Part shown: positions 24,250 to 64,000 of the stretch, piece by piece | How positions within the stretch are numbered: the stretch's first letter is position 1 | Layout: each line of letters opens with the position of its first letter | Assembly (NCBI GenBank): GCA_047495785.1 | Contig: JBLDXI010000003.1 | Coordinates: 1,178,001 to 1,242,000 of the forward strand | Length of the DNA stretch: 64,000 nt | Direction: 5' to 3' | Source: Lepidodermella squamata | Taxonomy: Eukaryota > Animalia > Gastrotricha | Translations under genes and position numbers: made by a program | Notes under the pieces: generated by a model | Database searches by the model: none | Told to the model about the DNA's origin: nothing | Seen by the model: only the letters and a program-made list of their open reading frames with translations

Positions 24250-26258
24250 ATGTTTGTACGATACACAGTTCTACTCACTATTTTTGCTCAAAAATGCTTG
24301 TCTGCAAAAGAAGTAGACAATCGAGTGGCATGTCAGCCACCTCCTGCGATCATGAACGGCTATATAAGCGGCGGAAATCTCACTGCTCTTGCAGGAGATA
24401 TTCGTATGATCGTTTGTTACCCAAATTTCATCCGAACTGGTGACAGCTACGTCATATGCAGCAAATACGGAAATTGGATTATGGATACCGGCTCTTGCGT
24501 CCACGGAGATCACATTCATTGCGGAGATCCTCCACTTCTTCGATACGGTTTTATCGAGCCCGGAGGTGTGGAAACCGGTGCCATGAGGAAAATAATTTGC
24601 CTACCAGGTTACTCGATCCCAGATGACTCAAACTATGCGACCTGTCAAGAGGATGCGACGTGGCTTTTGCCGGCTCAATGTGCCAGGGACTGTTCAGATT
24701 CCCCGAAAATCGATAATGCCTTCATAACCCAGGGCAGCTACAAGGTTGGCACTGTTAGGACCTTCATCTGCCGAGAAGGTTACAAGCTCCAAGGCAGTAA
24801 CACTTCAGTCTGCGAAATTAGCGGTAACTGGAATAACCAAGGAAGTTGCGTTGAAGGTAAGATCAGTTTCCCTTTAATTTCTGTCAATAATGTAATGGGA
24901 TTTTTCAGATTCAAGTGCCGCTAAAGAGTGCCCAGTGTTGCCTTATGTGCCCAACGGAGCCGTGATCCCTGGCACCAACGAAGTCGGGGCCATTAGATTT
25001 GTGCTCTGCGATCCAGGTTACGAAATGACAAAAGATGCGGAAAATGCGATAGTTTGCAAGTCCAATGGCTTTTGGACTGAGCCAGGTGTTTGCGTCCTCA
25101 CTGGTAATATTTTTGAATAAAAAAATACATTTATCATCATTTCATGTTTGTATAGCTCGCGTTCTTCTAACTACAACACAACGAGCGAGAGCACCGGCGA
25201 CTAACCCCACTACTATTCCTAACTTTACTACAACGCGTCGAGCTGTAACTGGTGGCAGTGGGTCTGTAGCTACAACAAGGAGGAGTGTTACAGCTGCAAG
25301 TGCTAGAACAACAACTCGCCCTACCACTTCAACTACAACTACTACCACAACCTCGAGGCCGAGAGTATCAACCTCCCAAACCTTCCGAACCCGTGCGACC
25401 ACTAACAATGACCTTCAAGATGTGATTACGACTCGACCAACTGTTGTAACTACAACAAGCCAGGTTTTCCGCACTCAAGCCCCGACTTGCTGCGACGTGA
25501 AGCCGAAAACTCGGTCCTTGGCGCTGATCGAGGCCAGTAAGCAGGGCGATAGAGACCAAGTGCTACGTCTCCTTGACTCTGGGGCAGATCCTAACTCGGC
25601 CGATGTTAATGGGTGGACAGCCCTTATGTGGGCAGCTAATTCGATGAGTTTGAATCAAAGCGCCATTATCTATGACCTCATGTCATGCTGTGTTGATATC
25701 AATGCGAAGAATCAAGCTGGAATTACTGCTTTGATGGTCGCGTCACGGTCCGATCGAGTCGCACCTGTGAGACTCCTTTTGAGAAGAGGCGCGAATGTTA
25801 ACGCAGTCAACGATTTCGGATTCTCAGCTCTCATGTACTCTGCGCAAGACGGTTCTGCTTCCGTTGCTGAGGTTCTCCTTCAATCTGGGGCAGACATCAA
25901 AGTTCGAGATGTCAATGGGGATGATTCATTAATTTGGGCATCGAGATCTAACAAGTCCGAGACTGTTGATTTACTCCTTGCGAATGGAGCTGATGCTAAA
26001 TCGGCGAACAAGCGTGGAACTACGGCTTTGATGCATGCTTCTGAGAAGGGCTATATCCAGATTGTTACTAGCCTGTTGGCTAGAGGTGCTAATGCTACAG
26101 CTGTTGATGCGGACGGAAACACGGCGATGAGCTTGGCGAGGGAGAATGGTCAAAGCGCTGTTATCAACATTTTAGCGGCTAAGAGATACGCTGCTATGAC
26201 TCTCGATGGATCCATTGATATGTCAAAAGCTGTTCGAAACATGTTCAGCGATAACTAG
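24250..26258 (+). CDS. Array gene A: secreted 4x Sushi + Thr-rich linker + ankyrin module; exons 24250-24856, 24909-25103, 25156-26258 (~634 aa)
   Basis: Signal peptide MFVRYTVLLTIFAQKCLS; C..P.I.NG...C..GY...C...G.W...G.C modules; TCCDVK cap; GWTALMWAA and GADPN repeats; AATAAA at 26270. Confidence 0.88.
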
Positions 26259-26474
26259 TTCTTTTATTGAATAAATCCCGAGTGAAGCTGCATTTCAAGG
26301 GTTTAGTTTACACAACGGCAAAAACTGGTGCCGTGAATTTTTTTACCAGTGATACTCAAATTGCTGCTATTTCTGACACGAACCTGACACGTAGTAAAAT
26401 TTCGTGATATGTTCTGTCAATACGACACAATCCGCAAACGGTTAACACCATACTTGAAACTCGACGATACCTTA

Positions 26475-27741
26475 ATGTATTCAAGAATTTTCGTTCTCTT
26501 ACTATTCACACTTCGATTTACCGAGGCGCAGTTTTTCAATTTCCCAGGTCCACTTCAGCCATTTTTCAACAACAGACCGATTTTAAATCAGCAAAGTATT
26601 TTTCCAATACAATTTTCGAACCAGGGACCTATTAATGGAATCGGCTTTGATCTCTCCTTACGGCCAAATTTGTCTCCGATTACACCATTTCAAAATATAC
26701 TACCCCAAGGCTGCTCGCCGCCTATTTCAAACATTGAGAACGGAATGATAGAGATGAAACTCCAAAATCTATTCGCCCCTTTCATGCAGCAAGAATTTTT
26801 CAATCAGTTTTTCAAGAATTCAGCCCTCGTGAATCACTACAGCGTGGGTAAATTATTTACCGAACTTATTCTTTCACCTTTAATTCATGCGATATAAAGG
26901 AAGCCAATTGACAGTTCGCTGCAATCCTGGATTCGTGTTACAAGGTCCTGGGAGCACAACCTGTTTGTCGAACGGAGGCTGGTCTCTTGTAGGAAAATGT
27001 TTACCCGCACTTAAAGCAGCATCAGAAGGTGCTTGTGACTGCCCTTCGGATAGCAGCAGAACGCAATCCGTAGAACTTATTGAAAAAGCTCGATCTGGAA
27101 ATGCCTCTGCAGTGGCTCGTCTTCTTGCTAACTGCGCCGATCCAGACTCACAAGATCCGACCAACAAATGGACAGCATTGATGTGGGCCTCGAATAACGG
27201 TCATATCAGAGTAGCGGAAAAACTGCTAGATTGCGAGGCTGATCCTAATTTGCGAAACATAGCTAACTCAACAGCTCTTATGTTTGCGGCGAAAAATGGC
27301 AACTCATCCCTTGTCGACCTTCTTCTGGCAAATGGAGCTAACGTAAATGCATCCAACGACTTCAGATCAACAGCTTTAGCTTTTGCGGCTCAAAAAGGGC
27401 TTACAGATGTTGTGAAACAGCTGATACGTGCAAAGGCTGATATAGACGCTGTAGATCTTGACGGAAATACTGCCTTGCATTGGGCAACTCGGGGCAACCT
27501 CTCAGAAACTGCTGCTGCGCTGATTTCAGCCGGGGCTGATATCGACAAAGTTAACAAGAACAAGCAAACAGCCTTAATGATAGCGGCAAAAGGAGGATTT
27601 TTGCCGATTGTTAAGCTGCTGGTTGACGAAGGCGCTAATGGAAGCGCTGTTGATATCGAGGGCAACACAGCCGCTAGCCTGGCGGAAGAATACGGTCATC
27701 AAGCTATTGTTGACGTGTTGAGAGAGCGCGACACCAGATGA
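26475..27741 (+). CDS. Array gene B: secreted F/Q/N/P-rich N-terminus + 1 Sushi with loop insertion + ankyrin module; exons 26475-26847, 26900-27741 (~404 aa)
   Basis: Signal peptide MYSRIFVLLLFTLRFTEA; Sushi CSPPISNIENG..VRCNPGF..TCLSNGGWSLVGKC across a 52-nt intron; CDC cap; ankyrin repeats. Confidence 0.86.
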
Positions 27742-27896: not shown

Positions 27897-29258
27897 ATGA
27901 TTTTGCTCAACTTGATATCGCTATTAGTTTCAGTGGTCATATTTTTCGCAAAGCTTAACGACTCGGCAGTGATCGTTACAAATGGTAACTTTTTATGACT
28001 CATTTTATGCCTTGCAACTAGCCCACCTCACCTTAGGCTACTGCCCTGAGATTCCCGAGATCGAAAATGGGTACTTTGACAAGCCACATTATACCTTCCT
28101 AGGCCAAAAGGTCCGGATTCACTGTTTTCCCGGCTCTGTCCTAGTTGGCAAGACACACATGATTTGCGAAAGTTCTGGAAAATGGTCCGAACCAGGCACA
28201 TGCGTTTCGGGTAAATTAAACCCTGCAATTTATCCTCATATTCTGGATTAATAATTTCCCAACTAGAACATCCAAGATTTTGTAAAGACGAGCCTGAAAT
28301 ACCGCATGCCCTGCTATCCCATGGTCAAAACCATGTAGGAGCAGTTCGCCATTTTTACTGCCGCGAGCCTTACTGGCTGTTCGGCGTTGGGGCCGCTAAA
28401 TGCGAGGAAGGCGGTGTCTGGCGGCCAGTCGGGGAGTGTCGAAGCCCTGATGCCCCGATTTGGATGAACCTATCATCTCAAGCTGCCGCTGACCCCTTCG
28501 AAAGCTTGTTTTTAGGATCAGTTTGCTGCGGCGGGTCGACTGTTCATTCTAGCATTTTGGTCGACGCCGCGAGACAGGGGGATCTCGACCAAATAACTCG
28601 GATGTTATCAAGAGGCGCAGATCCTAACTCTGTAAACGACGACGGGTGGACCCCTTTGACCTGGGCAGCTAATAACGGCAAGGCAACCATCGTCGATAAG
28701 TTACTTGACTGTTGTGCCAGTCCTGACATTCCGAATGAGATGAGAAGTACTCCTCTTATGTTAGCCGCTAGGAGCGGGGTGTTAACATCAGTCGAGCTAC
28801 TATTAAGGAAGGGGGCAAATGTCAGCGCTGTTAACCTATTCGGCGAAACGGCGCTGACCTTCGCGGTAAAAGGAGGCCGAAATGTTCACAGAAGGATTGT
28901 AGAAACTTTACTTAAGCGCAACCCACCTCTTGAACTAAGGGATTTAACTGGACACAACGCTTTGCATTGGGCAGTTATTGGCCGAAATACGGAGATCGTT
29001 AAATTGCTTTTACGAGCTAAAGCTGACGTTAACGCCCGGAATGGCGACGGCCAAACGGGGTTAATGCTCGCCGCCATTACAGGCGATTACGAGCTGGTCG
29101 ATGTGCTGATTAACGCCAAAGCTGACGCTACGATCACAGATTACAACGGAATGACAGCCCTGACTCTAGCTATGGAGAATTCTTTTTCTGACATTGCATT
29201 TTCCCTCTCGAAATCGATGAGGAATTCTTCGATCATTGCTAAAAAAAGCCGGTTATGA
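27897..29258 (+). CDS. Array gene C: secreted 2x Sushi + ankyrin module; exons 27897-27984, 28037-28210, 28267-29258 (~417 aa)
   Basis: Signal peptide MILLNLISLLVSVVIFFA; YCPEIPEIENG and FCKDEPEIPHA modules; VCCGGS cap and DCCASP; ankyrin repeats. Confidence 0.86.
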
Positions 29259-33400: not shown

Positions 33401-36400
33401 GAAGAGATCAATTTACGCTTCCGTTTTTATTCTAGGCCCATGCAATGGATCGCTTCCTTCAATTAACAACGGCATATTTCTCTCCGGCTCCAGTGATTTT
33501 GGATCTGTTCGGCGAATTCGGTGTAATGATGGCTTCATGATCTTGGGGAGAAACTATACCGTATGTGGAAGGAAAGGCTGGTCTCAACCCGGGGTTTGTG
33601 TGGCTAATTCACCTGTCTCCACCGGCTCAACCATAACTACAGCCTCGACAACATCTATTTCCACAACTGCCGCTACTACATCAACAAGGAGTGCTCCTAC
33701 GGTTTCAACTACCACTTTCCAATCTACTTCAACTACAACTGCTACTGCATCACCTTCTTCTTCAACTTCGCGAATATTTTCTACTTCAACTACTGCTAGT
33801 CCCTCAATTACTACATCCAAAAGACTCGATGAAACAACATACTTTGCCTCCGGTTAACAAATTGTTAATAATTTCTTACTCCTTTTTACATCGAAAATTT
33901 TATAGGTCCTTGTAATGGCTCTCTGCCATCCGTGGCAAATGGTTTCATTTTACCTGGGGAAAACGTATTTGGAGCTGTTAGAAGGATTCAGTGTAGTAAT
34001 GGATACGTCACTTTTGGGCGAAATTATACCGTCTGTGGTAGAAATGGGTGGTCCCAGCCCGGTCTTTGCGTCCCAATATCGACCTCTTCGGCTTCGACTC
34101 AGTCATCTCGAATCCCGAGTTCGACTCAAAGTTCTACAATGTCAACTACAAGACTGGTTACAACAGCCAGCGCCTCTTCGCCTTCAACCTCAACGTTTTC
34201 CCAAACTATGCGATCAACAATCTCCTCTACCACTGCTAAACTTCCCAGTTGTTGCGACAGACCAAAGAATGGTTCATCCCAGCAGTTGATAGCAGCAGTT
34301 CGAAACGGCAACGCATCTTTGGTAGATACACTTCTATCCTCTGGCGCAAACCCTGATTCAGTAGACTCAAGCATGTGGACGCCTCTGATGTACGCTGCTA
34401 ATATCGGCCGAAGCGACATTGTTAAACGCCTCCTTGATTGCTGCGCCAATCCTAACCTACTCAACAATGCTAACAGCACAGCTCTAATGTTTGGCGCGAA
34501 AAATGGCTCACTGCCTTCAGTTGACCTGCTGCTTAAGAGTGGAGCGAATGCGAACATTAAGAACATATTCGGGTCGTCCGCGCTGCTTTTTGCTGCTCAA
34601 AACGGCCATTCTGTTGTTGTTGATAGACTTCTGAAGGAGAGAATCGACTTGAATATTGCCGATGCAAGCGGGAACAGTGCCTTGATTTGGGCTGCCACCG
34701 GCAATCATTCTGAAGTTGTTCGCAATCTCATCAAGGCGAGAGTCGATGTTAATAAGGCCAATAACAACGGCCAAAATGCTCTGATGATCGCATCGAAGTC
34801 AGGATTCTACGACATTGTCGCTCAGCTGATAGACGCGGATGCGGTGTTGACTTCTGTTGATGCGGAGGGTAATACAGCATTATCCTTAGCTAAAGACTTC
34901 AAACGCGATGACATTGTCAAACTTTTGCTCGAAAGCGGGGCTTCGAGTTTGTCCTCCCCAAGGCCGCTAGCTATCATGATGACAACTACTTCGAGTCTGC
35001 AACAATGCTGCTCTGGAACGAAGATATTTTCTCAAAACCTACTCAACGCAGCTCGTGGAGGCGATTTAGCTACTTTGAGGCAGGAATTGGCGAGATCAGC
35101 CGATCCCAACTCAACAGACACGACTGGATGGACCCCGTTACTCATAGCGGCCGATCTTGGCTTTAAAGAAGGAGCTGCCCAACTGCTGTCTTGCTGTGCT
35201 AATCCGAATGCTAAAATTCAAGGGAACACTACGGCCTTGATGTTAGCCGTCAGAAGATCGTCCTTAGATCTCGTTGAAACTCTTATCCAGGGCGGAGCTG
35301 ATGCGAATGCAACCGATTTTACTGGAATGTCGGCATTGTTAATCGCTGTCTCAAGTAATCAGATCTCGATTGTTCGTCCCCTACTTGCTGCGAGGAGTGA
35401 TATTGAGAGAAGGGACAGTTCTGGTAACACTACTTTGTTAATAGCTACGAGGAACAACAATTCCGAAATCGTCGACTTACTCATCAAAGCCAAGGCGAAT
35501 CTCAATGCTATGAATAATGAGAACGAAACTGCTTTGATGGTCGCGTCGAAACTTGGATTCTTCCAAATTGTGCGCAATTTAGTTGATAATGATGCGCTGT
35601 TGAACTCGGTGGACTCAAGGGGAAAAACAGCTCTATCATTGGCGATTGGCAATGGGAAAAAGGAAGTTGCTGAATTTTTGCTCGAAAATGGAGCTCTTGC
35701 TTCAAGCCTTACAACAAATCGGCGGGTTCTTAGTCAGACTCCTGCTCCGACCTCTCAACTACAGACCTGTTGCAGGAATGGATCGAAGCCTAACTCGATT
35801 AGGTTAGTGCAGTCCGCGAAAAATGGCGATCTGATCGCTCTGAATGAGGAACTGAGTAGAGGCAGTGACCCTAATTCAGCCGACTCAGAATCATTCACTG
35901 CATTGATGCGAGCTGTGGAGATGGGCAATACCGATGTCATTAGGATTCTATCAACTTGTTGCGTTGATTTTGAGAGGATAAATCGGAACAATCAGACCGC
36001 CCTAATGATTGCAGTGCAAAATGGCTCGGTAGATGTTGTAGAAGGCCTACTCCGCTATGGAGCTAAGGCCAGCAGTGGATTGCTCGTAGCTGTTCAAAAT
36101 GGCCGAAAATCCATTGTACAAAAACTCATCCAATCAAAGGCTGATGTAAACATTAGAGATATTAGTGGAAATACTGCTCTGATATATGCGGCTATGAAAA
36201 ATTACACCGATCTTCTTGAAATTCTCATCTCAGCCAAAGCTGATATTAATGCTGTGAATAAGGATGGTCAAACAGCTCTCATGATTGCGGCTAAGCTGGG
36301 CTACCTAGAAATTGCGAAAATTCTTGTGGATAACGATGCTTTGATAAATCTTTTGGATTCAAAGGGTCAATCAGCTCTCACTTTGGCTGAGCAAAACGGC

Positions 36401-36472
36401 CGGAAAGATATTGTGACAATGCTATTGGAGAACGGAGCCTTTGTTCCTAAGACAACTTCGAAAAGACCTTGA
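30404..36472 (+). CDS. Array gene E: secreted ~14x Sushi + S/T-rich linkers + 3 ankyrin modules; exons 30404-30812, 30871-31041, 31091-31474, 31527-31877, 31927-32013, 32068-32310, 32366-33382, 33436-33852, 33906-36472 (~1881 aa)
   Basis: Signal peptide MLDKLLLIFALWLTIIHA. Eight phase-1 introns of 49-58 nt join all Sushi ORFs in frame. Caps SCCDRP, QCCSGT and TCCRNG are each followed by ankyrin repeats with CC in repeat 2. Confidence 0.82.
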
Positions 36473-36677: not shown

Positions 36678-39600
36678 ATGCGTTTAGTTGTCTTATTACT
36701 CGCCACCACCTGTTGCGTGCTTCAAGTCAGCGGTCGGAAACACTACGGTATCAAATCTTTAAGCCAATACGAGATTTTGATCAATTTGTCAACTGACAGG
36801 GGTTCAATATCAGACAATACCTCCGCCATGTGGTGACCCTGGCTCCCCATCGAATGGCGCCCTGCTGGATACAGCTGTTCCGTTTCGTCTTCGTTACGTA
36901 AGATGCCAAATAGGGTTTGATCTCACCGGGCCGAATTTTATCATGTGTCTGAACAATGGTTCTTGGTCTCAAGCTGGGCGATGCTTTCCCAGCAGTAGGT
37001 TGTTGAAATCACTCCATACAAAATGCACTTAAACCTGTTTTTCAGGCTCTAGCTATGAATGCCGGCCTGTACCTATGGTTCTGAATGGAAAAGTTGAACC
37101 AGGAAGTAATTTGATTGGCAGTCGACGGAGGCTAACTTGCAACGACGGCTTTTCGCTGAATGGTCAAAATGAAGTTGTATGCGGTCAAAACTGTGAGTGG
37201 GGTTACCTCGGTGCCTGCGTTAGACAATGTGGAATGCCCCCGAAGATCCCAAACGGCCGCATTGGAGAGGGATCAAATGATTTTGGCAGCAAGCGAAAGG
37301 TGTATTGTTACAGCGGTGTTTTGAAAAACGGAACTGGCGAGATCGCTTGTGGTTTCAATGGACTGTGGTCTGATCCTGGTTTCTGCACAGTTGGTACGTC
37401 TTAATGCAATTGTTTTCAATATCACAGATATTAATTCCTCTTTATAGCTCTGGCCCCCAAAATTACCATGTGCTCAGATGTGCCTTCAATCGCCCACGGC
37501 TTTGTGGACGACGAAACCCTCATGGGGAATGGTATCGGAACTGTTTTGAAATTCATGTGCGTATCGGGCTATGAAGTCAGTGGTAAGAGCGAAATCATAT
37601 GTGAGAAATCCGGCAAATGGGAGCCTCAAGGGATGTGCCGTAGAGGTAACAAAATTCTCCGTTTTATCTGCTTATCCAACAATTCATCTCACTGTAGAAA
37701 TTCGAAGTTGCAAAACACTTCCCTTTATACCTTACGGTAGAGTCGAACCCGGCACAAATGAAATCGGGGCTATTCGCTACATTGCCTGTGACGACCCTGA
37801 GCAGTTACCGGAAGGAGCGGGAATTATTCAATGCTTGAGTACTGGTCGCTGGTCAAGAATTGGGATTTGCAGTCCAGGTTATCAATCCTATTAACCCATC
37901 TACCTTAATTCAAAACAATTTATTTTAGAAGGGACTACTTCAAGAAGAAGACCGACTACAACTACAAATCCATTTGTGGTTCCGTTCGAAACGTGCTGCC
38001 TTATCAAAAATAGATACAACTCCGAAAGTCTCATCGAAGCTGCTCGAGATAAGGATGCTAATGGTATCAACTCTGAACTGCTAGTTGGGGCCGATCCAAA
38101 TTCAAAGTCGTCTGAAGATGGCAAAAATCCCATGATGATTTCTGCCGAAAATGGCTGCCTAGCTTGCATTCAAGTCCTTTTAAGTTGTTGCCCTGACTTA
38201 AATGCGATGGATCGTGATAACGCAACAGCTTTAATTCTCGCTACAAGAGCTGGAAATGTTGACATAGTCCAGCTACTTCTTGGGGCTAAGGCGAATCCAA
38301 ACCTGCAGGATAAGGACGGTAGAACAGCTCTTTTATATGCTGCAGCCGACGGAGATGTGACAATTGTTGCTCTTCTCTTGAAATCGCTTGAAATCACGGT
38401 GAGCCTTACGCTTGGGGACAAAGTTGGAACTACTCCTTTGGCTGCTGCGATGGAAAATGGTCATAGTGAAGTTGCAATTTTGATAAGAGCTGCGATGAAA
38501 GTACAGTCTTCAACGCCTGTTGCAACCACTGCTCTTACAACGATCGAATCTGGAGAATGTTGTGATAAGGTGCCGAAATATCAGTCACTTGCTCTGGTGA
38601 ATGCTTCTTGTTATGGCGATCTACCCACTATGTTGTCTCTACTCAGTGATGGGGCTGACCCTGGCAGTGCTGACGATACAAACGAGAAAATCTCCTCCTT
38701 AATGTGTGCTGGGATCGGAAATTTCACTAAGGCTATGGCAGCGTTGCTGGATTGCTGCGTCCAAATCGACCAGAAGAACGAACTAGGCGAAACAGCTTTG
38801 ATTCTAGCATCTGAAGCAGGGTCCTACAATGCCGTGGAAATTCTGCTACAGAACAAGGCAGCGGTCAACCAAACTGACAAATCTGGTATTACAGCGCTGA
38901 TTTCAGCGGCTGCTAACGGCCATGCGAAGGTGATAGAACTTCTATTGAGTTACAAGGCCGATATCAATCATAAGAATGATGTTGGTAATTCGGCTTTATT
39001 CGCTGCGGCCACTGGAAATCACTTTGATGCGGCCAAAAAGCTGCTAGAGAACGGCGCCGATGTCAACTCTACTGATAATTTTGGCTTGAGCCCTTTTACC
39101 ATAGCCCAAGCCGGTGGTTTCCAAGAAATTGTAGATTTGCTCAAGCAGTATAAAGCTGGACCTGGAAAGATGGCTCAAAGTTTAAAGTTAGAGAGCCTAC
39201 CCGTTACCGATGTCATTTATGACTACTACGAAGACAGCAAAGTGTGGAATTTGGACAAGAAGCATTCGATGTGTTGCCAGGGCCTGAAAACGCGCTCAGT
39301 CGAACTGGTTAATGCTTCATGTGAAGGAGATGTCCTCAATGTGAAACGGCTGCTCCATGATAATGCTGAGTCTAACAGCTTCGACGATCAGGGCCGAAAT
39401 CCACTTCTCTGCGCCAGTTACAACAACTTCACCGAAATAGTTCGGGACTTGATCACATGCTGCGCTAATGTCGAAGTTAGGAATGAACTCGGAGAGACTC
39501 CCTTGGTCCTCGCTTCAAAACTGGGATCTTTGGAAATTGTGAAAATCCTAATTGAAAACAAAGCTACCGTAAATACGTCAGATGGGTCAAAGGTTACTCC

Positions 39601-48106: not shown

Positions 48107-49164
48107 ATGGCTAGGTTGGATAGCGTTATTGCTGCATTGTTTCTGGCTTTCTTACAGCTCGCTGTCGGCCAGCTGAAAGCCGTATCCTGGCTGGATGATT
48201 GTAAGCCGAGATTATAATTCTACGCAGTTTTTATATAATTCCCTCTTAAGTTCGATGTCATTTTATGCACAATCCTAGAATTACGAATGGCGAAATCGTG
48301 TTCTGGAACGGCGGCCCGGCGATTAAATGTGACCCAGGCTATTACTTAGAAGGCAGAGGAAATGCTATTTGCAACTACTACAGCGGTTGGACGGTTTTCG
48401 GTAGATGCCGGCCCTATCCAATGATCTCAAACGAGGAGGGCTGTGCGAAAGAGCCGATGGTACCATTTGGGACAGTGCAGGATGGCGATATTAGTACAGG
48501 CGCTATTCGAAAGGTGAAATGCTTCTCAGACGATAGAGCGCCCGTTTTTGTCGCATGCTTCCCCGATGGAGAATGGAAACTGATTGGTGGAGTTCGATGC
48601 CCGGTGATGGATATCGTCAAATGCCGGTATCAAGGATGGTTCGGTCCGTTCTGCATGGAGCCAGAAAGCCCTCCTGTCGCTATCCTTCCAACAACCAAAA
48701 AGCCGTTCACCACACCACCGCCTTACTTAGACAATACTTTGATAGGCTCGATAAGGGCGAATGATCTCGCAACCGTTAGGATTCGACTTAGAGGTAGGCA
48801 GGCGGATTTAGAGGAAATGGACGAGAATGGCTGGACGGCGCTGATGTGGGCTGCGTATCATAACTTGTTAGGGACTGTTCGAGCGTTGATCGAACGGGGA
48901 GTTGACGTGAACGCGCGAAGTCACAGGGGCCAAACAGCGCTGATGGTTGCGGCTTTTGCGGGCAACGCGGAGATTGTGCGCTGGCTGCTGGACAGCGGCG
49001 CGAATGCGAAGCTGCGCGACGATGAGGGCAACACGGCGGCGTTTTTTGCGTCGACCCGCGGTCACACGGCCATAAAAGACCTGCTAACACAAAGAACGCT
49101 CGCAAACGATGCAACTGACAGTGGTAGCCTTTATTTTTACGATGAAAAACCTACTAACAAGTAA
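48107..49164 (+). CDS. Array gene J: secreted 2x Sushi + short Cys motif + short ankyrin module without Cys cap; exons 48107-48200, 48251-49164 (~335 aa)
   Basis: Signal peptide MARLDSVIAALFLAFLQLAVG; CHFMHNPRITNG and CAKEPMVPFG modules; CRYQGWFGPFC; GWTALMWAA and GQTALMVAA repeats. Confidence 0.84.
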
Positions 49165-49252
49165 ACAAGTCCAATATAACGCATACATTAAAAGACCGGC
49201 GCATTTTTTGTAACCTGATTGTTTCTCATTTTTTAGTCTTAGGTAGGCATAG

Positions 49253-53184: not shown

Positions 53185-55047
53185 ATGCCTGCGTTATCTT
53201 ATGGTGGTTTACTGTTTTTGCTTCAAATCGTCCGTCTAATTCTATGTCAAACATATTGTGACCAGCCGCCTGATGTCGAATACGGTTACATCGAGTTATC
53301 CAACCCGGTTCTCCTATCGCCTGTCGGTTCTAAAGGGCTTGTGAAGTGCGATTTTAAAGACTTCGTAGTAGACGGGCCTGAGTCAATTACGTGTCAAGGC
53401 AGCGGCGACTGGACTGTTCCAGGTCGTTGTGTCATACTGGGTATGAATTCTATTCAGGAACAATTTCTCCCATTAATTTTTATCAAATCAGGAGAGTCAT
53501 CACTGTGCAGACCTGTGCTACCGGATTTCGTACCCAATGCTGAGTTCGTTGACCTCGCTGCGGCGGGTGATTCATCAGTATGGCGACGCTTCAAATGCAA
53601 ACCGGGATACAAGTTGAAGGGCTCAGATTTCGTTCAATGCCTATTTGAAGAGAACAAGTGGGTTCCACAAGGCGAATGCATACCAGGTCGTTAATCTAAT
53701 ATGACTCTAATTATGTAACAATATAAACCAAAACAGAGAAAATTTCAAGGTGCATTGCCGAGCCACAAATTCGTAACGGAATCGCGTATTCTGGGAGCAA
53801 TTTAATTGGATCAACTCGAGTTATCGAATGTTTCATGGGATTTCGCGTATTTGGACTTAACAAAGTGACTTGTTTAGCAAATGGCACGTGGATTCAAAAC
53901 GGAACTTGCGTGCCAGGCTATCCTGACGATATAAATAACGAAAAATCTAGCGAAATTTCGACTTCCACCCCTTTGTATTGGGAACCCATGGCTTTTAACA
54001 TCTCTCAGCAATTCTCAGGCATGCCAGATTGGGCGATAAGCAGACCTAGTTCAAAGCCGCGTGATGAGGCTAGCTGTGAAGGTATCAACCCACCGAATAT
54101 TTTGAATGGTTGGTACAATAGCCTTGGAGCATCTAAATCAGTCAGCTGCGTTGATGGCTACGTAGTCAACGGTTCATCATTTATCACTTGCAACAACGGC
54201 GAATGGACAACGCCTGGGAATTGCATTCCAGGCGACAAAAGTGGGTAAACCTATTTTACACAATTGAATTTTGAAATGTTTCCTTGCAGACCAAACTGTT
54301 TGCCGTTGTGGTTACTACCCGAAAGTGCCGTCTCAGCAGCTGATCAGCCTCGTTAAAATCGGCTCCGAGGCATTCGTGGCGGCTTATATTCAAAGAAACG
54401 CAGATCCTAACTCTCGGGATCCAAGTAACGACTGGACAGCCCTTATGTTGGCTACGAATCGCGGAAATATCCCTGTTATGAGGACACTTTTACAATGTTG
54501 CGCCGATATTGGAGCGACTCGAAATGGAGACCAATTGACAGCTTTGCATCTTGCTGCTAGAAATAATGTTACGTCAGCCCCACTCCAGTTACTTTTGGCG
54601 CAAAAAGGGGTCGACGTCGGAGCGACTTCTAATTTCGGATCAACAGCTCTTCACCTGGCTGCTGAACGTTGCGCTACGAGAAACGTTGAGTTATTGATCA
54701 ACGCTAAGGCTGATTTGTCGGCTACAGATCGTAAAGGCATGACAGCCTTGCATTACGCTGCTGTAGCGAATTGTTCCGAGTCAACACGCATTCTTTTGGT
54801 AAACGGAGCGCAAGTTGATGCAGTGGATGATAGCGGTGTCACTGCCCTCATGATTGCGGCGAAAAATGGTGATAATGCGGTTGTTCGAGAGTTGCTTTCT
54901 AGGGGCGCGAATTCCAGTTTGAAAGATCGCGACGGCAAAACAGCGGTGGTCTTAGCTTTCGAAAACGGTCGCAGTGATGTTGTCAACATGATAACGAATT
55001 ACCTCGGAAATTTGTATGCTAAAAAATCACTCAAAACAGGAAAATAA
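53185..55047 (+). CDS. Array gene M: secreted 4x Sushi + ankyrin module; exons 53185-53440, 53492-53686, 53737-54240, 54290-55047 (~570 aa)
   Basis: Signal peptide MPALSYGGLLFLLQIVRLILC; CDQPPDVEYG and three further modules; CRCGYYPK cap and QCCADI. Confidence 0.85.
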
Positions 55048-55589: not shown

Positions 55590-57448
55590 ATGCAACTTTC
55601 GCCTCACGTCCTACTGTTTGTTGTTGTCGCCGGCTGTTATCGCACGCTCTCGCAAAGAACATGCGGCCCATCTCCTGATGTTGAGTATGGCTACGCTGAA
55701 TTTTCGGCCGCATTTTCAATATCCCCCATTGGAACAAAGCGTTTCTTAAAATGTTACTTCAAAGACTTCATTATTGATGGTCCAACAACAATTATCTGCC
55801 AGGATGATGGAAATTGGTCCATTCCTGGTCGCTGCATTAAGAGAGGTTACATTTGCATTCCAGTATCGGTTCACAAATTAATTCGCCTACGATTTTAGGA
55901 GCTCCAACGATATGCAGGCCAGTTTTACCCGATTTCATGCCCACTGCGGAGTTCGATGCGCAATCTGAGGTGGATGATTTCGCTGTTACTCGGCGTTTCA
56001 AATGCAAACCTGGCTATCGACTGAAAGACTCTGATTACATCACTTGCTACTTCGACGAAAACATATGGATCAAGGAAGGAGATTGTATTCCAGGTAAATA
56101 TTCAATTACTCCATCTGATAAACTCATAGTGTTGATTATAGATGAAATAAAGAGATGTATCCCTGAACCTCAAATTCCACATGGAATCGTATACTCTGGT
56201 AACAGTACGATTCGATCGATCAGAGTCATCGAATGCTTCTCTGGTTATCGAATCTATGGCCTTAATAAGATGACCTGTATGGCAGACGGTAATTGGTTCC
56301 AGAACGGATCTTGCGTTCCTGGTTACCCGGATGATTTTTTCAACCGTGGTAAGACTTCGACAACGACCACTCAAGTTACGCCAAGAAACAGGATTACCAC
56401 CATTCGACCATCCTCAACAACAACTGCGGAACCTGATGAGCCAGAGCCAATTGAGGAAATCCCGGAGTTACCCGACCCAATTTGTGATGGAAAGCTACCG
56501 GCTCTTCTGAATGGATGGTATATTGACTATGGATCGTACAAAGAGATTGCCTGTGTCAATGGCTTCATTATCAATGGGACGTCTTACATCCTTTGCACTG
56601 TTGCGGGTTGGTCACAACCTGGAAACTGCGCTTCAATCGATAGCGGTAAACTTATTTCGTTAATTTGTCACTTTGTTATTGAAAGCGTTTTTATTGTTCA
56701 AGTTTTCAAAGAATGTAAATGCGGAATCAGTCCGAAGGTCCAGTCGCAACAGCTGGTAGAGGCTGCAAAATTTGAAACCGAGGCAGTAGTCACGTCGCTT
56801 TTACAAGGCAACGCAGATCCCAACTCACGCGACCCAGGAGATGGCTGGACGCCGCTAATGTGGGCAGCGAACCGAGGAAATGTCCCTATGATGACACAGC
56901 TGCTGAAATGCTGCGCCAGCACGGAGGTGCGCAACGTCGCCCAATCGACCGCTCTGTTATTCGCAGCCAGAAATGAAACGACCAGCGGCCCGCTAGAGCT
57001 GTTGCTAGCCAACAAAGGTACCAACGTTAACACAGTCAATGTTTTCGGCTCAACGGCGCTTCATTTCGCCGCGCAGCGATGTGCGACTAAAAATGTTGAG
57101 CTGCTTATCAACGCCAAGGCTGACGTTGCGGCGAAAGATCGTGACGGAATGACAGCTCTTCATTATACGGCTCGAATTAACTGTGTCGAAGCTGCAAGGG
57201 TCTTGCTAGTTCGAGGTGCCCCGATCGATGCAGTTAATATCAACGGAACCACCCCTTTGATGATTGCTGCGAAATTCGGCAACGCTGCTATCGCAAGGGA
57301 GCTGATCATTAGAGGCTCGAATTTGGATGCTGTCGATATGAATGGAGATAACGCGTTGAAAATTGCGGCGGATTTCGGGAAAATTGATATTGTCAATCTG
57401 ATCACTGTAACACGACGCGTCTCATTACCGAGAAAAGCGAGGCCTTGA
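55590..57448 (+). CDS. Array gene N: close paralogue of M, 4x Sushi + ankyrin module; exons 55590-55845, 55899-56093, 56142-56645, 56703-57448 (~566 aa)
   Basis: Signal peptide MQLSPHVLLFVVVAGCYRTLS; first three exons have the same lengths as in gene M (256/195/504 nt); CKCGISPK cap and KCCAST. Confidence 0.85.
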
Positions 57449-57723: not shown

Positions 57724-59685
57724 ATGATTAGAGCCCATTTTCTACTTGCTTTCGCTGTGACATGCAGCTTCCTAGCCAAGTCGCGTGCAGAGGAAATGAC
57801 CTATTACTACTTCTTTGACGAAAACGGGCGAAATATTTCGACTAGGCTCCATCCACCAGGGCAGAAGCCTAGCATAGCCTCTTCACCAAAATCAGCAAAG
57901 GAGGCAATGAAAGAGTCTGTTGACGTCCCAGCTCCTATAGAATACGATTTACCACCGACTTTGCCACCAGCCTTGTTCGAAAAAACGCCAGTTAGCGCTC
58001 AGAAGGACGAAGAAATGTACACGCCAATTACATACCCGACTCAACAAGTTTTCACACTACCAGATACCCCGGCACAACCGGCTGTCACTCCGCCTCGCTC
58101 ATCAGCAGGATTTTTCGGAGGTTGGAGAGTCGGGCCACCTCTACCATCTGAACCGCAAGCCGAGGAGCCTGCTACAAGTCCTAGTTCTCCTGCGCCTGTT
58201 TCACCGTCAAGATTCGGAAAGTTGATTCGAGGGTCAAATCGGGATAATGCAATTGATGTCAACCTGCCGATTGATTCAACGCCAACAAGTTCGACTACCA
58301 CCACAACCACTTCCGCGATCACTTCGACTATTCCTACCACCACAACTACCAGGTTTTCAACGGCAGAAACATTGACCCCGGCGGTATCTTCCGTTGGCAA
58401 AGCTGGTGGAAAGTTAATCAAGGGTTGGATGATGAGCCAGCCTTCGACAGCGGCTTCTGTTTCGACTTCTACGACTACTACTCAGGCAACAACGCAAGCT
58501 AGGACCATTCCTTTAACTGTAGCGACTACTACTACTCAGGCAGCAACGCAAGCTAAGACCATTCCTTCAACTGTAAAGACAACTACGTCAGCCGCCACTA
58601 CTCCAATCACTTTGCCAACGCCTGCTAGAGGACGAAGCAGATCGACTTCAACAACTACTCAAGCTTCAAGACTTGCTACTGCTTTGATTTTCACCAGACC
58701 AAAAATGCCTCCTCAAATTTCGACCAGCTCCACCCCAAAACCTACTACAACCCAATTTATAAGCAAAGTTGCCATGAAAGATGATGATGATCTGCCGCCA
58801 CCCATCGACGGAGATGAACTACCGCCACCTTTACCTGATCAACCTGTGTTCGTGGCGAAAAATTCGATGTCAAACAAGGAGGATGACTTGCCACCACCTA
58901 TGGTTGAAATCGAGGTACCTCGAGTCACGTCGACGACTTCAAGACCAGTTATCGTTCAGTATAGGACTAAACCCGTTTGCTGCGGATTGTACCCAAAACG
59001 GCAATCAGAAGCTTTTGTGGCCTTAGTCCAGAATGGAAACGAAACAGCGGCGATTAATTTGCTGAAAGGTCGTGTGGATCCTTACTCGGCTGATGCGGTA
59101 GGATGGACTGGTATAATGCGAGCTGCTAGTTTGGGCAGGGTCGAGGTCATGAAGTTCCTTGTTGCAAATTGTTGTGTCGACATCGATTTTCGAGATGTTG
59201 ATAACACAACAGCTCTCATCTCTGCAAGTCAATACAATCGAACTAGAATGGTTGAGCTACTCCTGGCAAACAAGGCGAACCCGGATCTAAGAGATCTGAA
59301 TAACATGACAGCATTAATGTGGGCTGCAAATAATGGATTAGGCGAAATGGTCAGGATTTTGTTGAGGAGTGGCGCGAAGCCTGATTTGCGGGATAAGGAT
59401 GGAAATTCAGCTCTAATGTATGCCGCTATGTCCAATTGCAGCTCTTGCGCTCGATTTTTGCTGAACAAGGATGCGAGTATCAACCAGCAGAACAAAAAAG
59501 GCCTGACTGCTCTGATGATTGCTGCAAGGGCTCGTTTCGATGGTCTTATGCTTGATCTGTTGAAGGAAGGCGCCGACACTCAAATTCGGGACGCAAACGG
59601 CATGCGGGCTCTGCAGGGTATCCAATTTCCACAGGAACTTTCGCAAGACATCTGGTTTGCCATCAATAACAGGATCATTGCTTGA
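57724..59685 (+). CDS. Array gene O: secreted mucin-like (Pro/Thr/Ser) + ankyrin module, no Sushi, single exon, 653 aa
   Basis: Signal peptide MIRAHFLLAFAVTCSFLAKSRA; ~400-aa P/T/S region; VCCGLYPK cap and NCCVDI; ankyrin repeats. Confidence 0.86.
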   Translation: MIRAHFLLAFAVTCSFLAKSRAEEMTYYYFFDENGRNISTRLHPPGQKPSIASSPKSAKEAMKESVDVPAPIEYDLPPTLPPALFEKTPVSAQKDEEMYTPITYPTQQVFTLPDTPAQPAVTPPRSSAGFFGGWRVGPPLPSEPQAEEPATSPSSPAPVSPSRFGKLIRGSNRDNAIDVNLPIDSTPTSSTTTTTTSAITSTIPTTTTTRFSTAETLTPAVSSVGKAGGKLIKGWMMSQPSTAASVSTSTTTTQATTQARTIPLTVATTTTQAATQAKTIPSTVKTTTSAATTPITLPTPARGRSRSTSTTTQASRLATALIFTRPKMPPQISTSSTPKPTTTQFISKVAMKDDDDLPPPIDGDELPPPLPDQPVFVAKNSMSNKEDDLPPPMVEIEVPRVTSTTSRPVIVQYRTKPVCCGLYPKRQSEAFVALVQNGNETAAINLLKGRVDPYSADAVGWTGIMRAASLGRVEVMKFLVANCCVDIDFRDVDNTTALISASQYNRTRMVELLLANKANPDLRDLNNMTALMWAANNGLGEMVRILLRSGAKPDLRDKDGNSALMYAAMSNCSSCARFLLNKDASINQQNKKGLTALMIAARARFDGLMLDLLKEGADTQIRDANGMRALQGIQFPQELSQDIWFAINNRIIA

Positions 59686-60428: not shown

Positions 60429-62223
60429 ATGGCCACGATACTGCGACACGTCTCGGCTTTGATCTTCGCCGTTGCCGCCCTTCTCCAGGTTCCGGCGGCC
60501 TCAGCGCAGGAATGCCTCCGCCTCCCTAAAATAGAAAACGGAAAATTGGATCTTCTCAACGCTGTAGAGGTAAAAGTTGGAACTACGCTCAACATTGTTT
60601 GCTTCGAAGGTTATACCATCACTGGATCCAAAAATGTCACCTGCTCAGAGAATGGATGGACGCAACCTGGAGATTGCGTTGAAAGAAGTAAGATATTGAA
60701 ATAGTAGCTTCTCGTTAAATAATCATTTGTTCCAGTTACGCTTGGTTGCCCGAGATCGGATGACATTCTTGATGTTCTAATTCCTCATGCTCGCTTTACA
60801 ACACCTGAAATTTTCGAGGATGGATTCGTTATGCGGCGGTATTTTCGGTGTAAAGCTGGCTACAACTTACAGGGGATGGACTTCATCGAATGCGACGATC
60901 CATTTAACACTGAAATGACAGATTGGTCAGCTCTTGGAACTTGCAAAAGAGGTTAGAAGTAATTTCAGAGTTCCAGATTCTCATCTTTTATTCTTCCTTC
61001 AAGACAATTCAATCTGCCCTATGACTCCGGTACCAAATGGAAAGTTCTCTGAGCAAATGTCTGAGGTAGATGGTGGTAATTTAAGACTCATGTTCCGATG
61101 CGACCCTGGTTTCGTACTTCGCGGATCAAATGTCATGTACTGCAATCCTCGTGAAAAGCGTCCTGATTACGCCGGATGGCGAGCATTCGGCCAGTGCCTG
61201 AGACCCGAAACTGAATTCGAATTAATCGACTGCGGACCTCCTCTTGTTGTTGAAAACGCAATTATCGAGTCTGCAGACCCTCGTTTCCGCTCTCGGAGTA
61301 AATTCAGCTGTGCTAGTGATTTCGAATTAGTCGGGAAGAACGAAATTTACTGCGGAGCTTACTCGCAATGGTTCGTCGCTGGAAATTGTGTTCCCATTTC
61401 GGGAAAGTCTAAAATTCAAGAAATGGTCACTGCTGCAATTCGGCGAAGGACTACAACACCGCCGAGAACTACTATTGTACCTGACTCTCCACCCAAATGC
61501 CTATGCGGGACAGCAAGTTCTTACAAATTAATGGATGCTGTCCTGGCTGGAAATATCACAGGGGCTGAGTACCTCCTAACAACAGGACAGGCGAATTACA
61601 ATTCTAGAGATGCGAAGCAATCAGCTTTCATCCTAGCATCTAGAAAAGGCGATGAAGCAATGGTTCGGCTGTTCCTCAAGTGCTCAGAGTGTTTGGAAGT
61701 CGACGCCACTAGCAGTGAAGGATCGAGTGCTTTATTTTTCATAGCTAGAATGGAGAACTCTACAGAATTACTTGGCCAGCTGATTAAAGCTGGAGCGATG
61801 ATTGATTTCCGTAATCGATACTTCTCAACGCCACTTCACTACGCGGCGGCTCATGGCCGAAAGGAGAATATAGAGATGTTATTGAAAGCTGGAGCTTATG
61901 TCAACTCGCAAGATGCTGATGGCTATTCCGCCTTAATCTGGGCAGTTCATGGGAACCATTCAGATTGCGTAGCGCTGTTACTCGAGAATGGAGCGAATGC
62001 CAACGTTCAAAACAGGGCTGGTCTTTCTCCATTAATGATTGCGGCGAGATATGGTTACCTTGAAATTTTAGAGATGCTCCTTCAAGTTAGAAGTATCAAC
62101 CTAGCGGCCAAGGATACCTATGGCTTCACAGCTACAGACTTTGCGTTTCAGTTCAAAAACTACGAAGCAGCCGGTCTTTTGACGATGTTTGAGGTCAGAA
62201 ATTCGGCGAAGAAGGACGCGTGA
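60429..62223 (+). CDS. Array gene P: secreted 4x Sushi + ankyrin module; exons 60429-60687, 60736-60951, 61004-62223 (~564 aa)
   Basis: Signal peptide MATILRHVSALIFAVAALLQVPAASA; CLRLPKIENG and three further modules; KCLCGT cap and KCSECL; STPLHYAAAHG. Confidence 0.85.
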
Positions 62224-62514
62224 GCTGATTACTGATAATTATCTTTAAAACTCGTTGTATTTTTTTGTAAATCTTTCGTCGTCGCTCATTCTGCTCGCTG
62301 ATATGAAGAAAAAAAATAAAAGGCACGTCGAGCAAGTTGACCAACACTAGTAGTTGAATACTTTTAACAAGTTAGTTTATGGTCACGTATGAAGGTTCTG
62401 CTGCTACTGCTGGCCAGGCTCTTGGATTAATAGCATTACGCATAGGCACCTGTGATATCACGATGTAGTTTCTCGCTAGCCTAGAGAATTATTTACACGA
62501 CCGACGTGTTTATC

Positions 62515-64000
62515 ATGATGCTTGTCGTCCTAACCACAATTTTACTATTTGCACTATCAAATGCCGTTGAATTTTGCCCGCGGCAAATCAACATCTTCAA
62601 CGGCAATGTCGATTTCAGTGACGGCCGACCTAATCCTGTCGGAATTCGGCGACCTCTACTATGCTCGAAAGGTTTTATATCCCTTGGCCAACCTTACGTC
62701 GAATGCACATCTGACGGCTGGTTCGTACCAGGAAATTGCATAAATCGAAGTAAGATTTTAAAAACCTCACAGGACGACTTTATCGTGATTTTCTTTTAGC
62801 TTCATTTAGATGCCGGAGATCTGACGGATCATTACCTAAAATCGCATTTTGGGACAGCCCAGAATGGGTTGATGATTATTGGTTCGTAAGGCGTTCTTTC
62901 AACTGTGTTGCTAATTACACCCTGAAAGGATTAAGCTATTACGAATGTGACGAAAATCAGAGAGCTCAATGGAAGGCAAGGGGATTCTGCGAGCTTACCG
63001 AAAATCAACTGACAGTCAAAAAAATCGTGCCAATGTGTTCCGATCTGGCGATGAATTTCCTTCCAAACGCGAATTTCACGGGAAATGCGATTCTAGCTCC
63101 GGCTGGGTATTACACAAGATTTTTCCGCTGTAATCCCGACTATTACCTATTTGGAAGCTCCCCGACTGCGTTGTGCAATCCAAATGAGAAGAGAAGTGAA
63201 TACTCTGGTTGGAAAATTCTTGGATCATGTCGACAAGGTTTGATTTATAATCCATCAATTTTTGGCTTAATTTTCTTGTTTTCAGATCCGATGAATTTCC
63301 CAACATGCCCCGAACCTATAATCGAAAATGGGCAAGTTCGAGTAGGAGCGAACACATTCTCCTCCCGCCGCTTCTTCCGCTGCGCTGCTGGCTATGAATT
63401 GCTTGGCGTCAACCACATTATTTGCACTCTAAATGGAACTTGGTTCACCGCAGGAGGCTGTGTACCAGTTGGACAGACAACTATGTTCCCAGCTACAACA
63501 ATTGCCGCCACTACCACGATAAATTATCCTTCTATTTTCGAGTTCGTGTCATTTCGCTCCCGTGCGCTGTCTAATACTAGTTCGCAGCTACCGTATTTTC
63601 GAAACAGCACTACAACTATGCAACCTAGCGTTGCCAGGATAACTATTCAACTAAAGACGACACTCAGGCCGAGAACAACAATGGGAGATTCTCCATTTCA
63701 AGCAATCACTCGGCGCAGGTCAACAACAGTTGCCCCCACTCAAGGAATCCCCCAAGGAATCATGAGATCAACTCAGGGGCAACTAAACACATGTATTTGT
63801 GGAGAAATCAACTCGCCAGACCTGGTCGCAGCAGCGAAATATGGAAACATTCAAACAGTTCAGTATCTCTTATCAAACGGGGCAAGTTACAATTCCGTTG
63901 ACGAAGCAAATCAAACGGCGCTACATGCTGCAATTCGAAATAACCAACAGCGAGTTGTTGAGATTTTCATGTCATGCGTTGAATGCATCAACCTCGAGGC
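62515..64000 (+). CDS. Array gene Q (3' truncated by window edge): secreted 4x Sushi + Thr-rich linker + ankyrin module, paralogue of P; exons 62515-62749, 62800-63237, 63286->64000
   Basis: Signal peptide MMLVVLTTILLFALSNA; manual translation gives four Sushi modules, a TCICGE cap, QTALHAA and MSCVEC. Confidence 0.82.

What the first reader, a model, noticed from the sequence alone, without database searches (positions are those of the whole stretch)
25480..64000. Co-varying cysteine pairs imply a disulfide-stapled ankyrin fold
Seen: 18 of 20 ANK modules begin with a two-Cys cap (CC or CxC) about 10 residues before repeat 1, and each of these has two more Cys in the first two repeats. These are usually CC replacing the G-A of the canonical 'GAD' in repeat 2 (MSCCVD, LDCCAN, LKCCAS). 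The variants track together: gene B has CDC with ANCAD + LDCEAD, and genes P/Q have CLC/CIC with CSEC/CVEC. Genes G and J lack both the cap and the repeat-2 cysteines. Extra Cys also come in pairs: NASCYG/LMCAG and NASCEG/LLCAS in gene F; AERC/ANCS and AQRC/INCV in M/N; CxxC in GCLAC, GCSKC and NCSSC. Inference: two disulfides clamp an N-cap onto the repeat stack, which makes sense only in an oxidising compartment and would be an unusual ankyrin adaptation.
Basis: partly seen in the sequence, partly recalled or inferred. Interest (0 to 1): 0.85.

Follow-up and report, generated by a model that had tools for sequence, protein, structure and literature searches.

The report
Cysteine-stapled secreted ankyrin repeat modules
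A small invertebrate carries a tandem array of secreted Sushi-mucin proteins whose ankyrin-repeat modules almost all keep four cysteines, placed so that they most likely tie an N-terminal cap peptide to repeats 1 and 2 by two disulfide bonds; this would adapt a normally intracellular fold to life outside the cell.

Summary
The window holds 20 ankyrin (ANK) modules between 25479 and 64000. Eighteen have a two-Cys cap (CC or CxC) and two anchor Cys at the end of helix 2 of repeat 2, or of repeats 1 and 2. G1 and J1 lack all four.

- CC replaces positions 26-27 (x-G of 'xGAD'), not G-A.
- M1 and N1 combine a CxC cap with plain CC anchors.
- P1 has one unpaired extra Cys.

Evidence for the secretory pathway:
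- Sushi domains and ANK modules share single ORFs.
- Gene O is signal peptide + mucin + ANK in one ORF.
- No membrane-spanning segment lies between Sushi and cap.
- An RNA run shows a spliced phase-1 Sushi intron in gene D.
- N-glycosylation sequons are 2.7 times as frequent as in generic ANK proteins.

In 22 capped modules at 30-49% identity, the only invariant columns are three of the four staple Cys. A syntenic relative in metagenomes has four more modules with the gene-B arrangement. CC at positions 26/27 occurs 0 times in 2721 generic ANK repeats.

AlphaFold2 gives canonical 7-repeat stacks (pLDDT about 97; cap about 72). The tools expose no coordinates, so SG-SG distances were not measured and the pairing stays inferred.

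I found no described equivalent. Other first-stage notes flag similar secreted ANK clusters elsewhere in this genome.

The parts
24250..64000 (+). Tandem array of + strand genes, each signal peptide + Sushi/CCP exons + Thr/Ser(Pro)-rich linker + 1-6 ANK modules
   Evidence: ORF lists. Pfam Sushi and Ank hits within the same ORFs. Signal-peptide-like starts at 24250, 26475, 29694, 30386, 36678, 49253, 53185, 55590, 57724, 60429 and 62515.
25479..26255 (+). Module A1: cap CC (codons at 25488, 25491); anchors CC (25686, 25689)
27025..27738 (+). Module B1, type II: cap CDC (27034, 27040); anchors at repeat 1 position 27 (27133) and repeat 2 position 26 (27232)
   Evidence: AlphaFold2 model pLDDT 96.9. 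Same ORF holds a Sushi domain.
28515..29255 (+). Module C1: cap CC (28524, 28527); anchors CC (28710, 28713)
33853..33905 (+). 53-nt GT-AG phase-1 intron. It joins a Sushi exon to the exon encoding Sushi + linker + modules D1-D3.
   Evidence: Loose ends of RNA-run contigs at 33854 and 33905 match the other side of the intron. Sequence read.
34241..36469 (+). Modules D1, D2, D3 (starts 34241, 34997, 35759). Each has cap CC + repeat-2 CC, 4 Cys per module. All three lie in one 846-aa ORF with a Sushi domain and a Ser/Thr linker.
   Evidence: AlphaFold2 model of D1: pLDDT 96.5, seven repeats. Foldseek rmsd 1.0-1.2 A to DARPins. RNA contigs cover 33500-36400 only. An allele has a synonymous TGC>TGT change at anchor codon 34439-34441.
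37985..42106 (+). Modules EF1-EF6 (starts 37985, 38549, 39263, 39929, 40679, 41405) in one 1377-aa ORF. All have cap CC + repeat-2 CC. EF1 and EF5 add CxxC at positions 16/19. EF2 and EF3 add repeat 1 position 13 + repeat 2 position 10.
43379..44146 (+). Module G1: no cap and no anchors. It has its own Cys pair at 43838 and 43946.
48715..49161 (+). Module J1: short module with no Cys at all
50883..51503 (+). Module K1: cap CC (50892, 50895); anchors CC (51084, 51087)
54292..55044 (+). Module M1: cap CRC; anchors CC; extra pair at 54670 and 54772. The cap follows the last Sushi Cys by about 10 residues, after a phase-1 intron (about 54241-54289).
56646..56711 (+). Inferred 66-nt phase-1 intron of gene N (GTAAAC...AAAG). 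It removes the hydrophobic stretch that the raw ORF shows between Sushi and cap.
   Evidence: Sequence; analogy with gene M. Inferred from splice signals and reading frame; not confirmed by RNA.
56705..57445 (+). Module N1: cap CKC; anchors CC; extra pair at 57080 and 57182
57724..59685 (+). Gene O: one 653-aa ORF with signal peptide, Thr/Ser/Pro-rich linker and module O1 (58969-59682). O1 has cap CC, anchors CC, and an extra CxxC at 59437 and 59446.
61489..62220 (+). Module P1, type III: cap CLC; anchors C-S-E-C (61681, 61690); one unpaired Cys at 61966. Two Sushi domains lie in the same ORF.
63783..63998 (+). Module Q1, cut by the window end, type III: cap CIC; anchors C-V-E-C

Best explanation
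The ANK modules are lumenal or extracellular domains of secreted Sushi-mucin glycoproteins.

Each module starts with a short cap peptide (C-C or C-x(1-3)-C, then 7-11 residues) ahead of an N-capping repeat. The two cap cysteines most likely form two disulfides with two anchor cysteines. The anchors sit in one surface patch at the C-terminal ends of the outer helices (helix 2). They occupy either positions 26+27 of repeat 2 (type I), or position 27 of repeat 1 plus position 26 of repeat 2 (type II), or a C-x-E-C loop in repeat 2 (type III).

The staple would pin the N-terminal cap repeat onto the stack. The terminal repeats are the ones prone to fraying in ANK stacks (general knowledge). This would stabilise the modules outside the cell.

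The extra Cys come in pairs: CxxC at the start of helix 2, and pairs on neighbouring repeats. These would be additional local disulfides.

Shown: the pattern, its conservation, the secretory context and the canonical ANK fold. Inferred: that the Cys are oxidised, and which Cys pairs with which.
For: 1. Same polypeptide as disulfide-dependent extracellular domains. Sushi + ANK lie in one ORF in genes B, D, N, P and Q. Gene O is signal peptide + mucin + ANK in one ORF. A signal-peptide-like start precedes each gene. In M and N the cap follows the last Sushi Cys by about 10 residues, with no membrane-spanning segment.
2. RNA contigs cover the D exon and show the spliced phase-1 intron 33853-33905.
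3. In 22 capped modules at 30-49% identity, the only invariant columns are both cap Cys and repeat 2 position 26. The median terminal branch is 1.17 changes per site.
4. All four Cys are absent together in G1, J1 and the relative's P0010.
5. Four modules of a syntenic metagenomic relative have exactly 4 Cys each, in the type II arrangement.
6. A CC cap is found only with adjacent anchors (13 against 0). Separated anchors always have spaced caps (7 of 7). P1 and Q1 combine the shortest tether with a 2-residue anchor insertion.
7. Cys counts are even in 23 of 24 complete modules.
8. CC at positions 26/27 occurs 0 times in 2721 generic ANK repeats.
9. N-x-S/T sequons run at 1.33 per 100 aa against 0.49 in generic ANK, and 60 observed against 45.9 +/- 6.2 after shuffling.
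10. AlphaFold2 gives canonical stacks. Cap residues score about 72-73, and only 2-3 residues fall below 70, so the cap is not modelled as a floppy tail.
11. The allele seen in the read runs has a synonymous change in an anchor Cys codon.
Against: - No SG-SG distance or any other coordinate-based measure could be obtained. The connectivity is unproven.
- The covariation rests on few independent events. Type II is one clade; M1/N1 and P1/Q1 are each one event; the three Cys-free modules may or may not be independent losses.
- M1 and N1 changed the cap spacing without changing the anchors.
- Two adjacent Cys each bonding to two adjacent Cys is an uncommon geometry.
- P1 has an odd Cys count.
- There is no protein-level evidence.
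Confidence: 0.7

Rival explanations
1. The Cys are oxidised but paired differently. The cap forms its own local disulfide (vicinal, or a CxnC loop), and the anchors bond to each other (vicinal in type I, inter-repeat in type II). There would then be no cap-to-stack staple.
For: In type II the cap is CxC, CxxC or CxxxC, which can close on itself. Repeat 1 position 27 and repeat 2 position 26 lie on neighbouring repeats. Cap spacing varies within type II while the anchors stay constant.
Against: For the 13 CC/CC modules this needs two vicinal disulfides per module, which are rare and strained (general knowledge). It does not explain why cap and anchors are always gained and lost together. It does not explain why a CC cap never accompanies separated anchors.
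Confidence: 0.1
2. The four Cys form a structural metal site (such as Zn-Cys4) rather than disulfides.
For: There are four conserved Cys that must come together. The CxxC-type caps of type II resemble zinc knuckles.
Against: The modules share a polypeptide with Sushi domains and mucin linkers in the secretory pathway, where Cys4 zinc sites are unusual. Adjacent CC pairs are poor zinc ligand geometry (general knowledge). The extra Cys also come in pairs.
Confidence: 0.07
3. The Cys make intermolecular disulfides that polymerise the mucin-like proteins.
For: Mucins commonly polymerise through Cys-rich domains (general knowledge). The cap is near the surface, with pLDDT about 72.
Against: The strict four-Cys set per module, the position-specific anchors at helix ends, and the coupling of cap and anchor arrangements fit intramodule pairing better. 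Multi-module proteins repeat the set in every module.
Confidence: 0.05
4. The ANK part is cytosolic and the cap CC is a palmitoylation site next to a membrane anchor; or the pattern is only inherited, without function.
For: ANK repeats of eukaryotes are overwhelmingly cytosolic, and juxtamembrane CC motifs are often palmitoylated (general knowledge).
Against: There is no hydrophobic segment between the Sushi or mucin part and the cap. The only candidate, in the N ORF, is an intron. The cap recurs inside multi-module chains (D2, D3, EF2-6). The Cys are invariant at 30-49% module identity and across species.
Confidence: 0.03

Closest known systems
Canonical ankyrin-repeat domains and designed ankyrin repeat proteins (DARPins) with N-capping repeats
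   Same: 33-residue repeats and 5-7 repeats per module. Repeat 1 resembles an N-capping repeat. The AlphaFold2 models superpose on DARPins at 1.0-1.2 A rmsd. There are strong Pfam Ank hits.
   Different: Known ANK domains are cytosolic or nuclear and free of disulfides. None of the PDB matches aligns to the cap (profile positions 1-8). CC at positions 26/27 is absent from 2721 generic repeats.
Toxoplasma RON9 and its coccidian and Cryptosporidium orthologues (PMC3299665)
   Same: A secretory-pathway protein with a signal peptide that combines ankyrin repeats and a Sushi domain.
   Different: [quoted passage not shown] The passages I searched for 'ankyrin' and 'sushi' describe no Cys staple on the ankyrin repeats. 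I did not test homology with the present family. Here the host is a protostome animal, with many Sushi domains before the ANK modules and large tandem expansion.
Latrotoxins (widow-spider venom)
   Same: ANK-repeat proteins that act outside the producing cell. They appear among the PDB sequence matches.
   Different: They have a different architecture (N-terminal helical domains + about 20 ANK repeats), no Sushi or mucin part, and no cap/anchor Cys pattern at the aligned positions (only the generic repeat region matched).
Secreted ANK effectors of plasmodiophorids (PMC12503489) and oomycetes (PMC11139960)
   Same: Signal-peptide ANK proteins expanded in a genome.
   Different: At least the plasmodiophorid ones are studied as host-targeted effectors (PMC12503489). 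No disulfide is mentioned for the ANK fold in the passages shown from that paper. I did not read the oomycete paper; it appears only in the search hit list.

Membership tests
Ankyrin repeat (Pfam PF00023 / PF12796) | Significant match to the Ank profiles above the curated cut-off | tested here: met
   Ank_2 E-values 1e-38 to 1e-48 in all ANK-bearing ORFs tested
Ankyrin repeat (Pfam PF00023 / PF12796) | Stack of helix-turn-helix repeats with a 33-residue period | tested here: met
   AlphaFold2 gives 14 helices in 7 repeats, pLDDT 96.5 and 96.9. Foldseek TM 0.9 to DARPins. Repeat spacing is 33.
Sushi/CCP-domain extracellular proteins (PF00084) | Sushi domains on the same polypeptide as the ANK modules | tested here: met
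   Sushi and Ank hits occur in the same ORF for B and P. The D, N and Q ORFs read directly. A spliced phase-1 intron is seen in RNA.
Secretory-pathway protein | N-terminal signal peptide and no membrane-spanning segment before the ANK part | tested here: met
   Hydrophobic N-termini lie at each gene start (a simple hydropathy scan, not SignalP). Gene O is in one ORF. The hydrophobic stretch in N is intronic.
   Structure prediction returns no coordinates, and no structure files reach the scripting machine
   Only invariant columns. 23 of 24 complete modules have an even count. G1, J1 and P0010 lack all four. A second species keeps 4 per module.
Apicomplexan RON9 family | Orthology to TgRON9 (C-terminal ANK x5-6 + one Sushi + transmembrane segment) | not tested
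Only the architecture was compared, from PMC3299665.

The most novel reading that the evidence does not exclude
This animal, and at least one relative, has built a large extracellular recognition or adhesion repertoire on disulfide-stapled ankyrin modules. These would be natural DARPin-like binders displayed on Sushi/mucin stalks and diversified in tandem arrays, comparable in logic to LRR-based variable lymphocyte receptors. The Cys staple would be the innovation that let the ANK fold work outside the cell.
Probability: 0.3. Interest if true: 0.85.

Novelty: new variant of a known kind. Interest (0 to 1): 0.62.

Why it matters
In eukaryotes, ankyrin repeats are textbook intracellular modules without disulfides. 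A naturally stapled extracellular version would show how a repeat fold is adapted to the secretory pathway. It would give a natural template for cap-stabilised designed repeat binders. It would also mark a whole, so far undescribed, class of secreted animal proteins. Other first-stage notes report many such clusters in this genome. The claim can be tested directly with one recombinant module.

Tried and rejected
1. Measuring SG-SG distances. Neither AlphaFold2 job exposes coordinates, and the scripting machine holds no structure files.
2. Sequence searches for further family members.
   - The word-indexed searches were dominated by generic ANK proteins. They gave only P0010, P0241 and P0242.
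   - The exhaustive profile search returned 150 giant ANK proteins and no family member.
   - The ESM Atlas search gave only generic ANK clusters.
3. A degenerate DNA pattern for the W-T-x-L-M ... L-L-x-C-C signature. It hit 4 modules in the window. In the metagenome collection it gave 50 matches, none ANK-like, about what chance predicts.
4. Exact-protein look-up of gene O. It is not on record, so the genome's own gene calls are not in the collection.
5. Species identification. The NT5C2 search shows a protostome animal. The best named hits are only 47-59% identical (springtails, molluscs), and the species was not determined.
6. Literature. Three full-text searches gave no paper describing a disulfide-stapled ANK domain. 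The library is incomplete, so this does not prove absence.
7. Palmitoylated juxtamembrane CC. Rejected because no membrane-spanning segment exists between Sushi and cap.
Full report
**Setting**

Bases 1-23000 of the window carry ordinary animal housekeeping genes: two tandem NT5C2-type 5'-nucleotidases, an acid phosphatase, a LisH/CTLH protein, proteasome subunit Rpn10, SPCS1 and USP5. The 5'-nucleotidase matches protostome proteins best, at only 47-59% identity to named species. The host is therefore a protostome without a closely related annotated genome in that collection. The species stayed unknown.

From 24250 to the window end, all large ORFs lie on the + strand. They encode Sushi/CCP domains, Thr/Ser-rich low-complexity linkers and ankyrin repeats (Pfam).

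**The observation**

I cut out 20 ANK modules and aligned them.

- Eighteen begin with two cap cysteines: CC in 13 and CxC in 5. The last cap Cys lies 7-11 residues before the conserved Leu of the first helix.
- All 18 also have two anchor cysteines. I mapped every Cys onto the 33-residue repeat.
- In 15 modules the anchors are at positions 26 and 27 of repeat 2.
  - In B1 they are at position 27 of repeat 1 and position 26 of repeat 2.
  - In P1 and Q1 they form C26-x-E-C with a two-residue insertion.
- G1 and J1 have neither cap nor anchors.
In repeat coordinates they are 16/19 (CxxC at the start of helix 2; EF1, EF5, O1), repeat 1:13 + repeat 2:10 (EF2, EF3), and position 15 of one repeat + 16 of the next (M1, N1).

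**Is it more than chance or mere inheritance?**

- In 237 generic ANK proteins returned by the database searches (2721 repeats), Cys occurs 20 times at position 26, 4 times at position 27 and never at both.
- The modules are old paralogues: 30-49% identical, with a median terminal branch of 1.17 changes per site and a star-like tree.
- In the alignment of 22 capped modules, the only invariant columns are the two cap Cys and the repeat-2 position-26 Cys.
- Cys counts are even in 23 of 24 complete modules. Shared ancestry inflates such counts, so I give the Fisher and binomial values only as descriptions.

**A second species**

The best 5'-nucleotidase hit led to metagenomic contigs that are syntenic with the window: NT5C2 x2, CTLH, Rpn10, SPCS1, USP5, then Sushi genes. 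At the contig end sits a Sushi + ANK gene with two modules. Two further Sushi x3 + ANK proteins, P0241 and P0242, came from the same samples.

All four modules have exactly four Cys. All are of the B1 kind: cap CxC, CxxC or CxxxC, plus repeat 1 position 27 and repeat 2 position 26. On the tree they form one clade with B1 (support 88/86). A further Sushi + ANK protein of that organism (P0010) has no Cys in its ANK part, like G1 and J1.

Three arrangements therefore exist:
- Adjacent anchors go with CC caps (13) or CxC caps (2).
- Separated anchors always go with spaced caps (7 of 7).
- Loss removes all four Cys at once.
- P1 and Q1 combine the shortest cap tether with the two-residue anchor insertion.

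This fits cap-to-anchor bonding. It rests on only about four to six independent events.

**Compartment**

- Sushi domains and ANK modules lie in the same uninterrupted ORF in B, D, N, P and Q.
- Gene O (57724-59685) is signal peptide, mucin-like linker and ANK module in one ORF.
- Hydrophobic signal-peptide-like starts precede each gene.
- In M and N the cap follows the last Sushi Cys by about ten residues.
- The one hydrophobic stretch between Sushi and cap, in the N ORF, is bounded by GT...AG in phase 1. It matches the intron position of gene M, so it is intronic.
- In multi-module genes the cap recurs after each short Thr/Ser linker (D2, D3, EF2-6). This excludes an N-terminal lipidation signal.
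- Contigs of a public RNA run cover only 33500-36400 of the 6 kb laid, which is the D exons. Their loose ends define a spliced 53-nt phase-1 intron (33853-33905) that completes a Sushi domain in frame.
- N-x-S/T sequons are 2.7 times as frequent as in generic ANK proteins and exceed composition-matched shuffles.
- A DNA run shows about 1.7% allelic differences. One is a synonymous TGC>TGT change in an anchor Cys codon, and one is an in-frame 12-nt deletion in the linker.

**Fold**

AlphaFold2 models of D1 (type I) and B1 (type II), built from the family alignments, are canonical seven-repeat stacks. Their pLDDT values are 96.5 and 96.9. They superpose on DARPins at 1.0-1.2 A.

The first ten residues average pLDDT 72-73, and only two or three residues fall below 70. 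The cap is therefore not modelled as a disordered tail. In B1 the residue just before helix 1 forms a beta-bridge with the residue after the repeat-1 anchor Cys.

The tools give no coordinates, so the decisive SG-SG measurement could not be made.

From general knowledge of the fold, positions 26/27 of repeats 1 and 2 form one surface patch at the C-terminal ends of the outer helices. By my estimate this patch lies about 15 A from the start of helix 1 of repeat 1. A 7-11 residue tether reaches that far easily. This is reasoning, not a test.

**Interpretation**

The best reading (confidence about 0.7) is that these are secreted glycoproteins whose ANK modules are stapled by two disulfides. The disulfides would run from an N-terminal cap peptide to the ends of helix 2 of repeats 1 and 2, with further local disulfides in some modules.

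The rivals are a different pairing (cap-cap and anchor-anchor), a Cys4 metal site, intermolecular cross-links, and a cytosolic lipidated protein. Each is argued against in its own section of this report.

**Comparison and novelty**

The domain is a member of the ankyrin-repeat family by every test run here.

The nearest described architecture is apicomplexan RON9: signal peptide, ANK repeats and one Sushi domain (PMC3299665). No ANK cysteine staple is described in the passages I read from that paper. I did not test homology.

Secreted ANK effectors of plasmodiophorids and the latrotoxins are looser parallels. No PDB sequence match reaches the cap. Three literature searches found no disulfide-stapled ANK domain.

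I class this as a new variant of a known kind.

Other first-stage notes report further clusters of secreted Sushi/ANK genes in this genome. I did not check them. They suggest that the stapled module belongs to a large extracellular ANK repertoire.

Noticed in passing
window 683-7371 (- strand); L003 9299-13684: Two tandem NT5C2-type 5'-nucleotidase genes. The gene order NT5C2 x2 - CTLH - Rpn10 - SPCS1 - USP5 - Sushi/ANK array is conserved in a metagenomic relative. That relative lacks the acid phosphatase gene which sits at 9215-10534 in the window.
   Followed up: partly
window 34147 and 32300-38299: A public DNA run differs from the window at about 100 places in 6 kb. One difference is an in-frame 12-nt deletion in the Ser/Thr-rich linker of gene D, so the linker length is polymorphic.
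   Followed up: no
window 49253-51506: Gene K uses a Pro/Gln-rich low-complexity exon (50084-50476) instead of a Thr/Ser mucin linker between its signal peptide and the capped ANK module. No Sushi ORF was seen for this gene.
   Followed up: no
window 38156/38165, 40847/40856, 59437/59446: A CxxC motif at positions 16/19 (the N-terminus of helix 2) recurs in three diverged modules (EF1, EF5, O1). This is the placement of thioredoxin-type CxxC motifs. It may be a local disulfide or something redox-active.
   Followed up: no
L001 2723-4144 (- strand): The relative also encodes a signal-peptide ANK protein (473 aa) without Sushi domains and without the cap/anchor Cys set. It lies next to the Cys-free Sushi+ANK gene P0010.
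   Followed up: no
window 24250-64000: Introns are very short (53-66 nt). The three Sushi-exon junctions I examined are phase 1, as in classical animal Sushi genes. Long antisense ORFs inside the ANK exons (such as 34126-34566 -) look like by-products of the repeat composition.
   Followed up: partly
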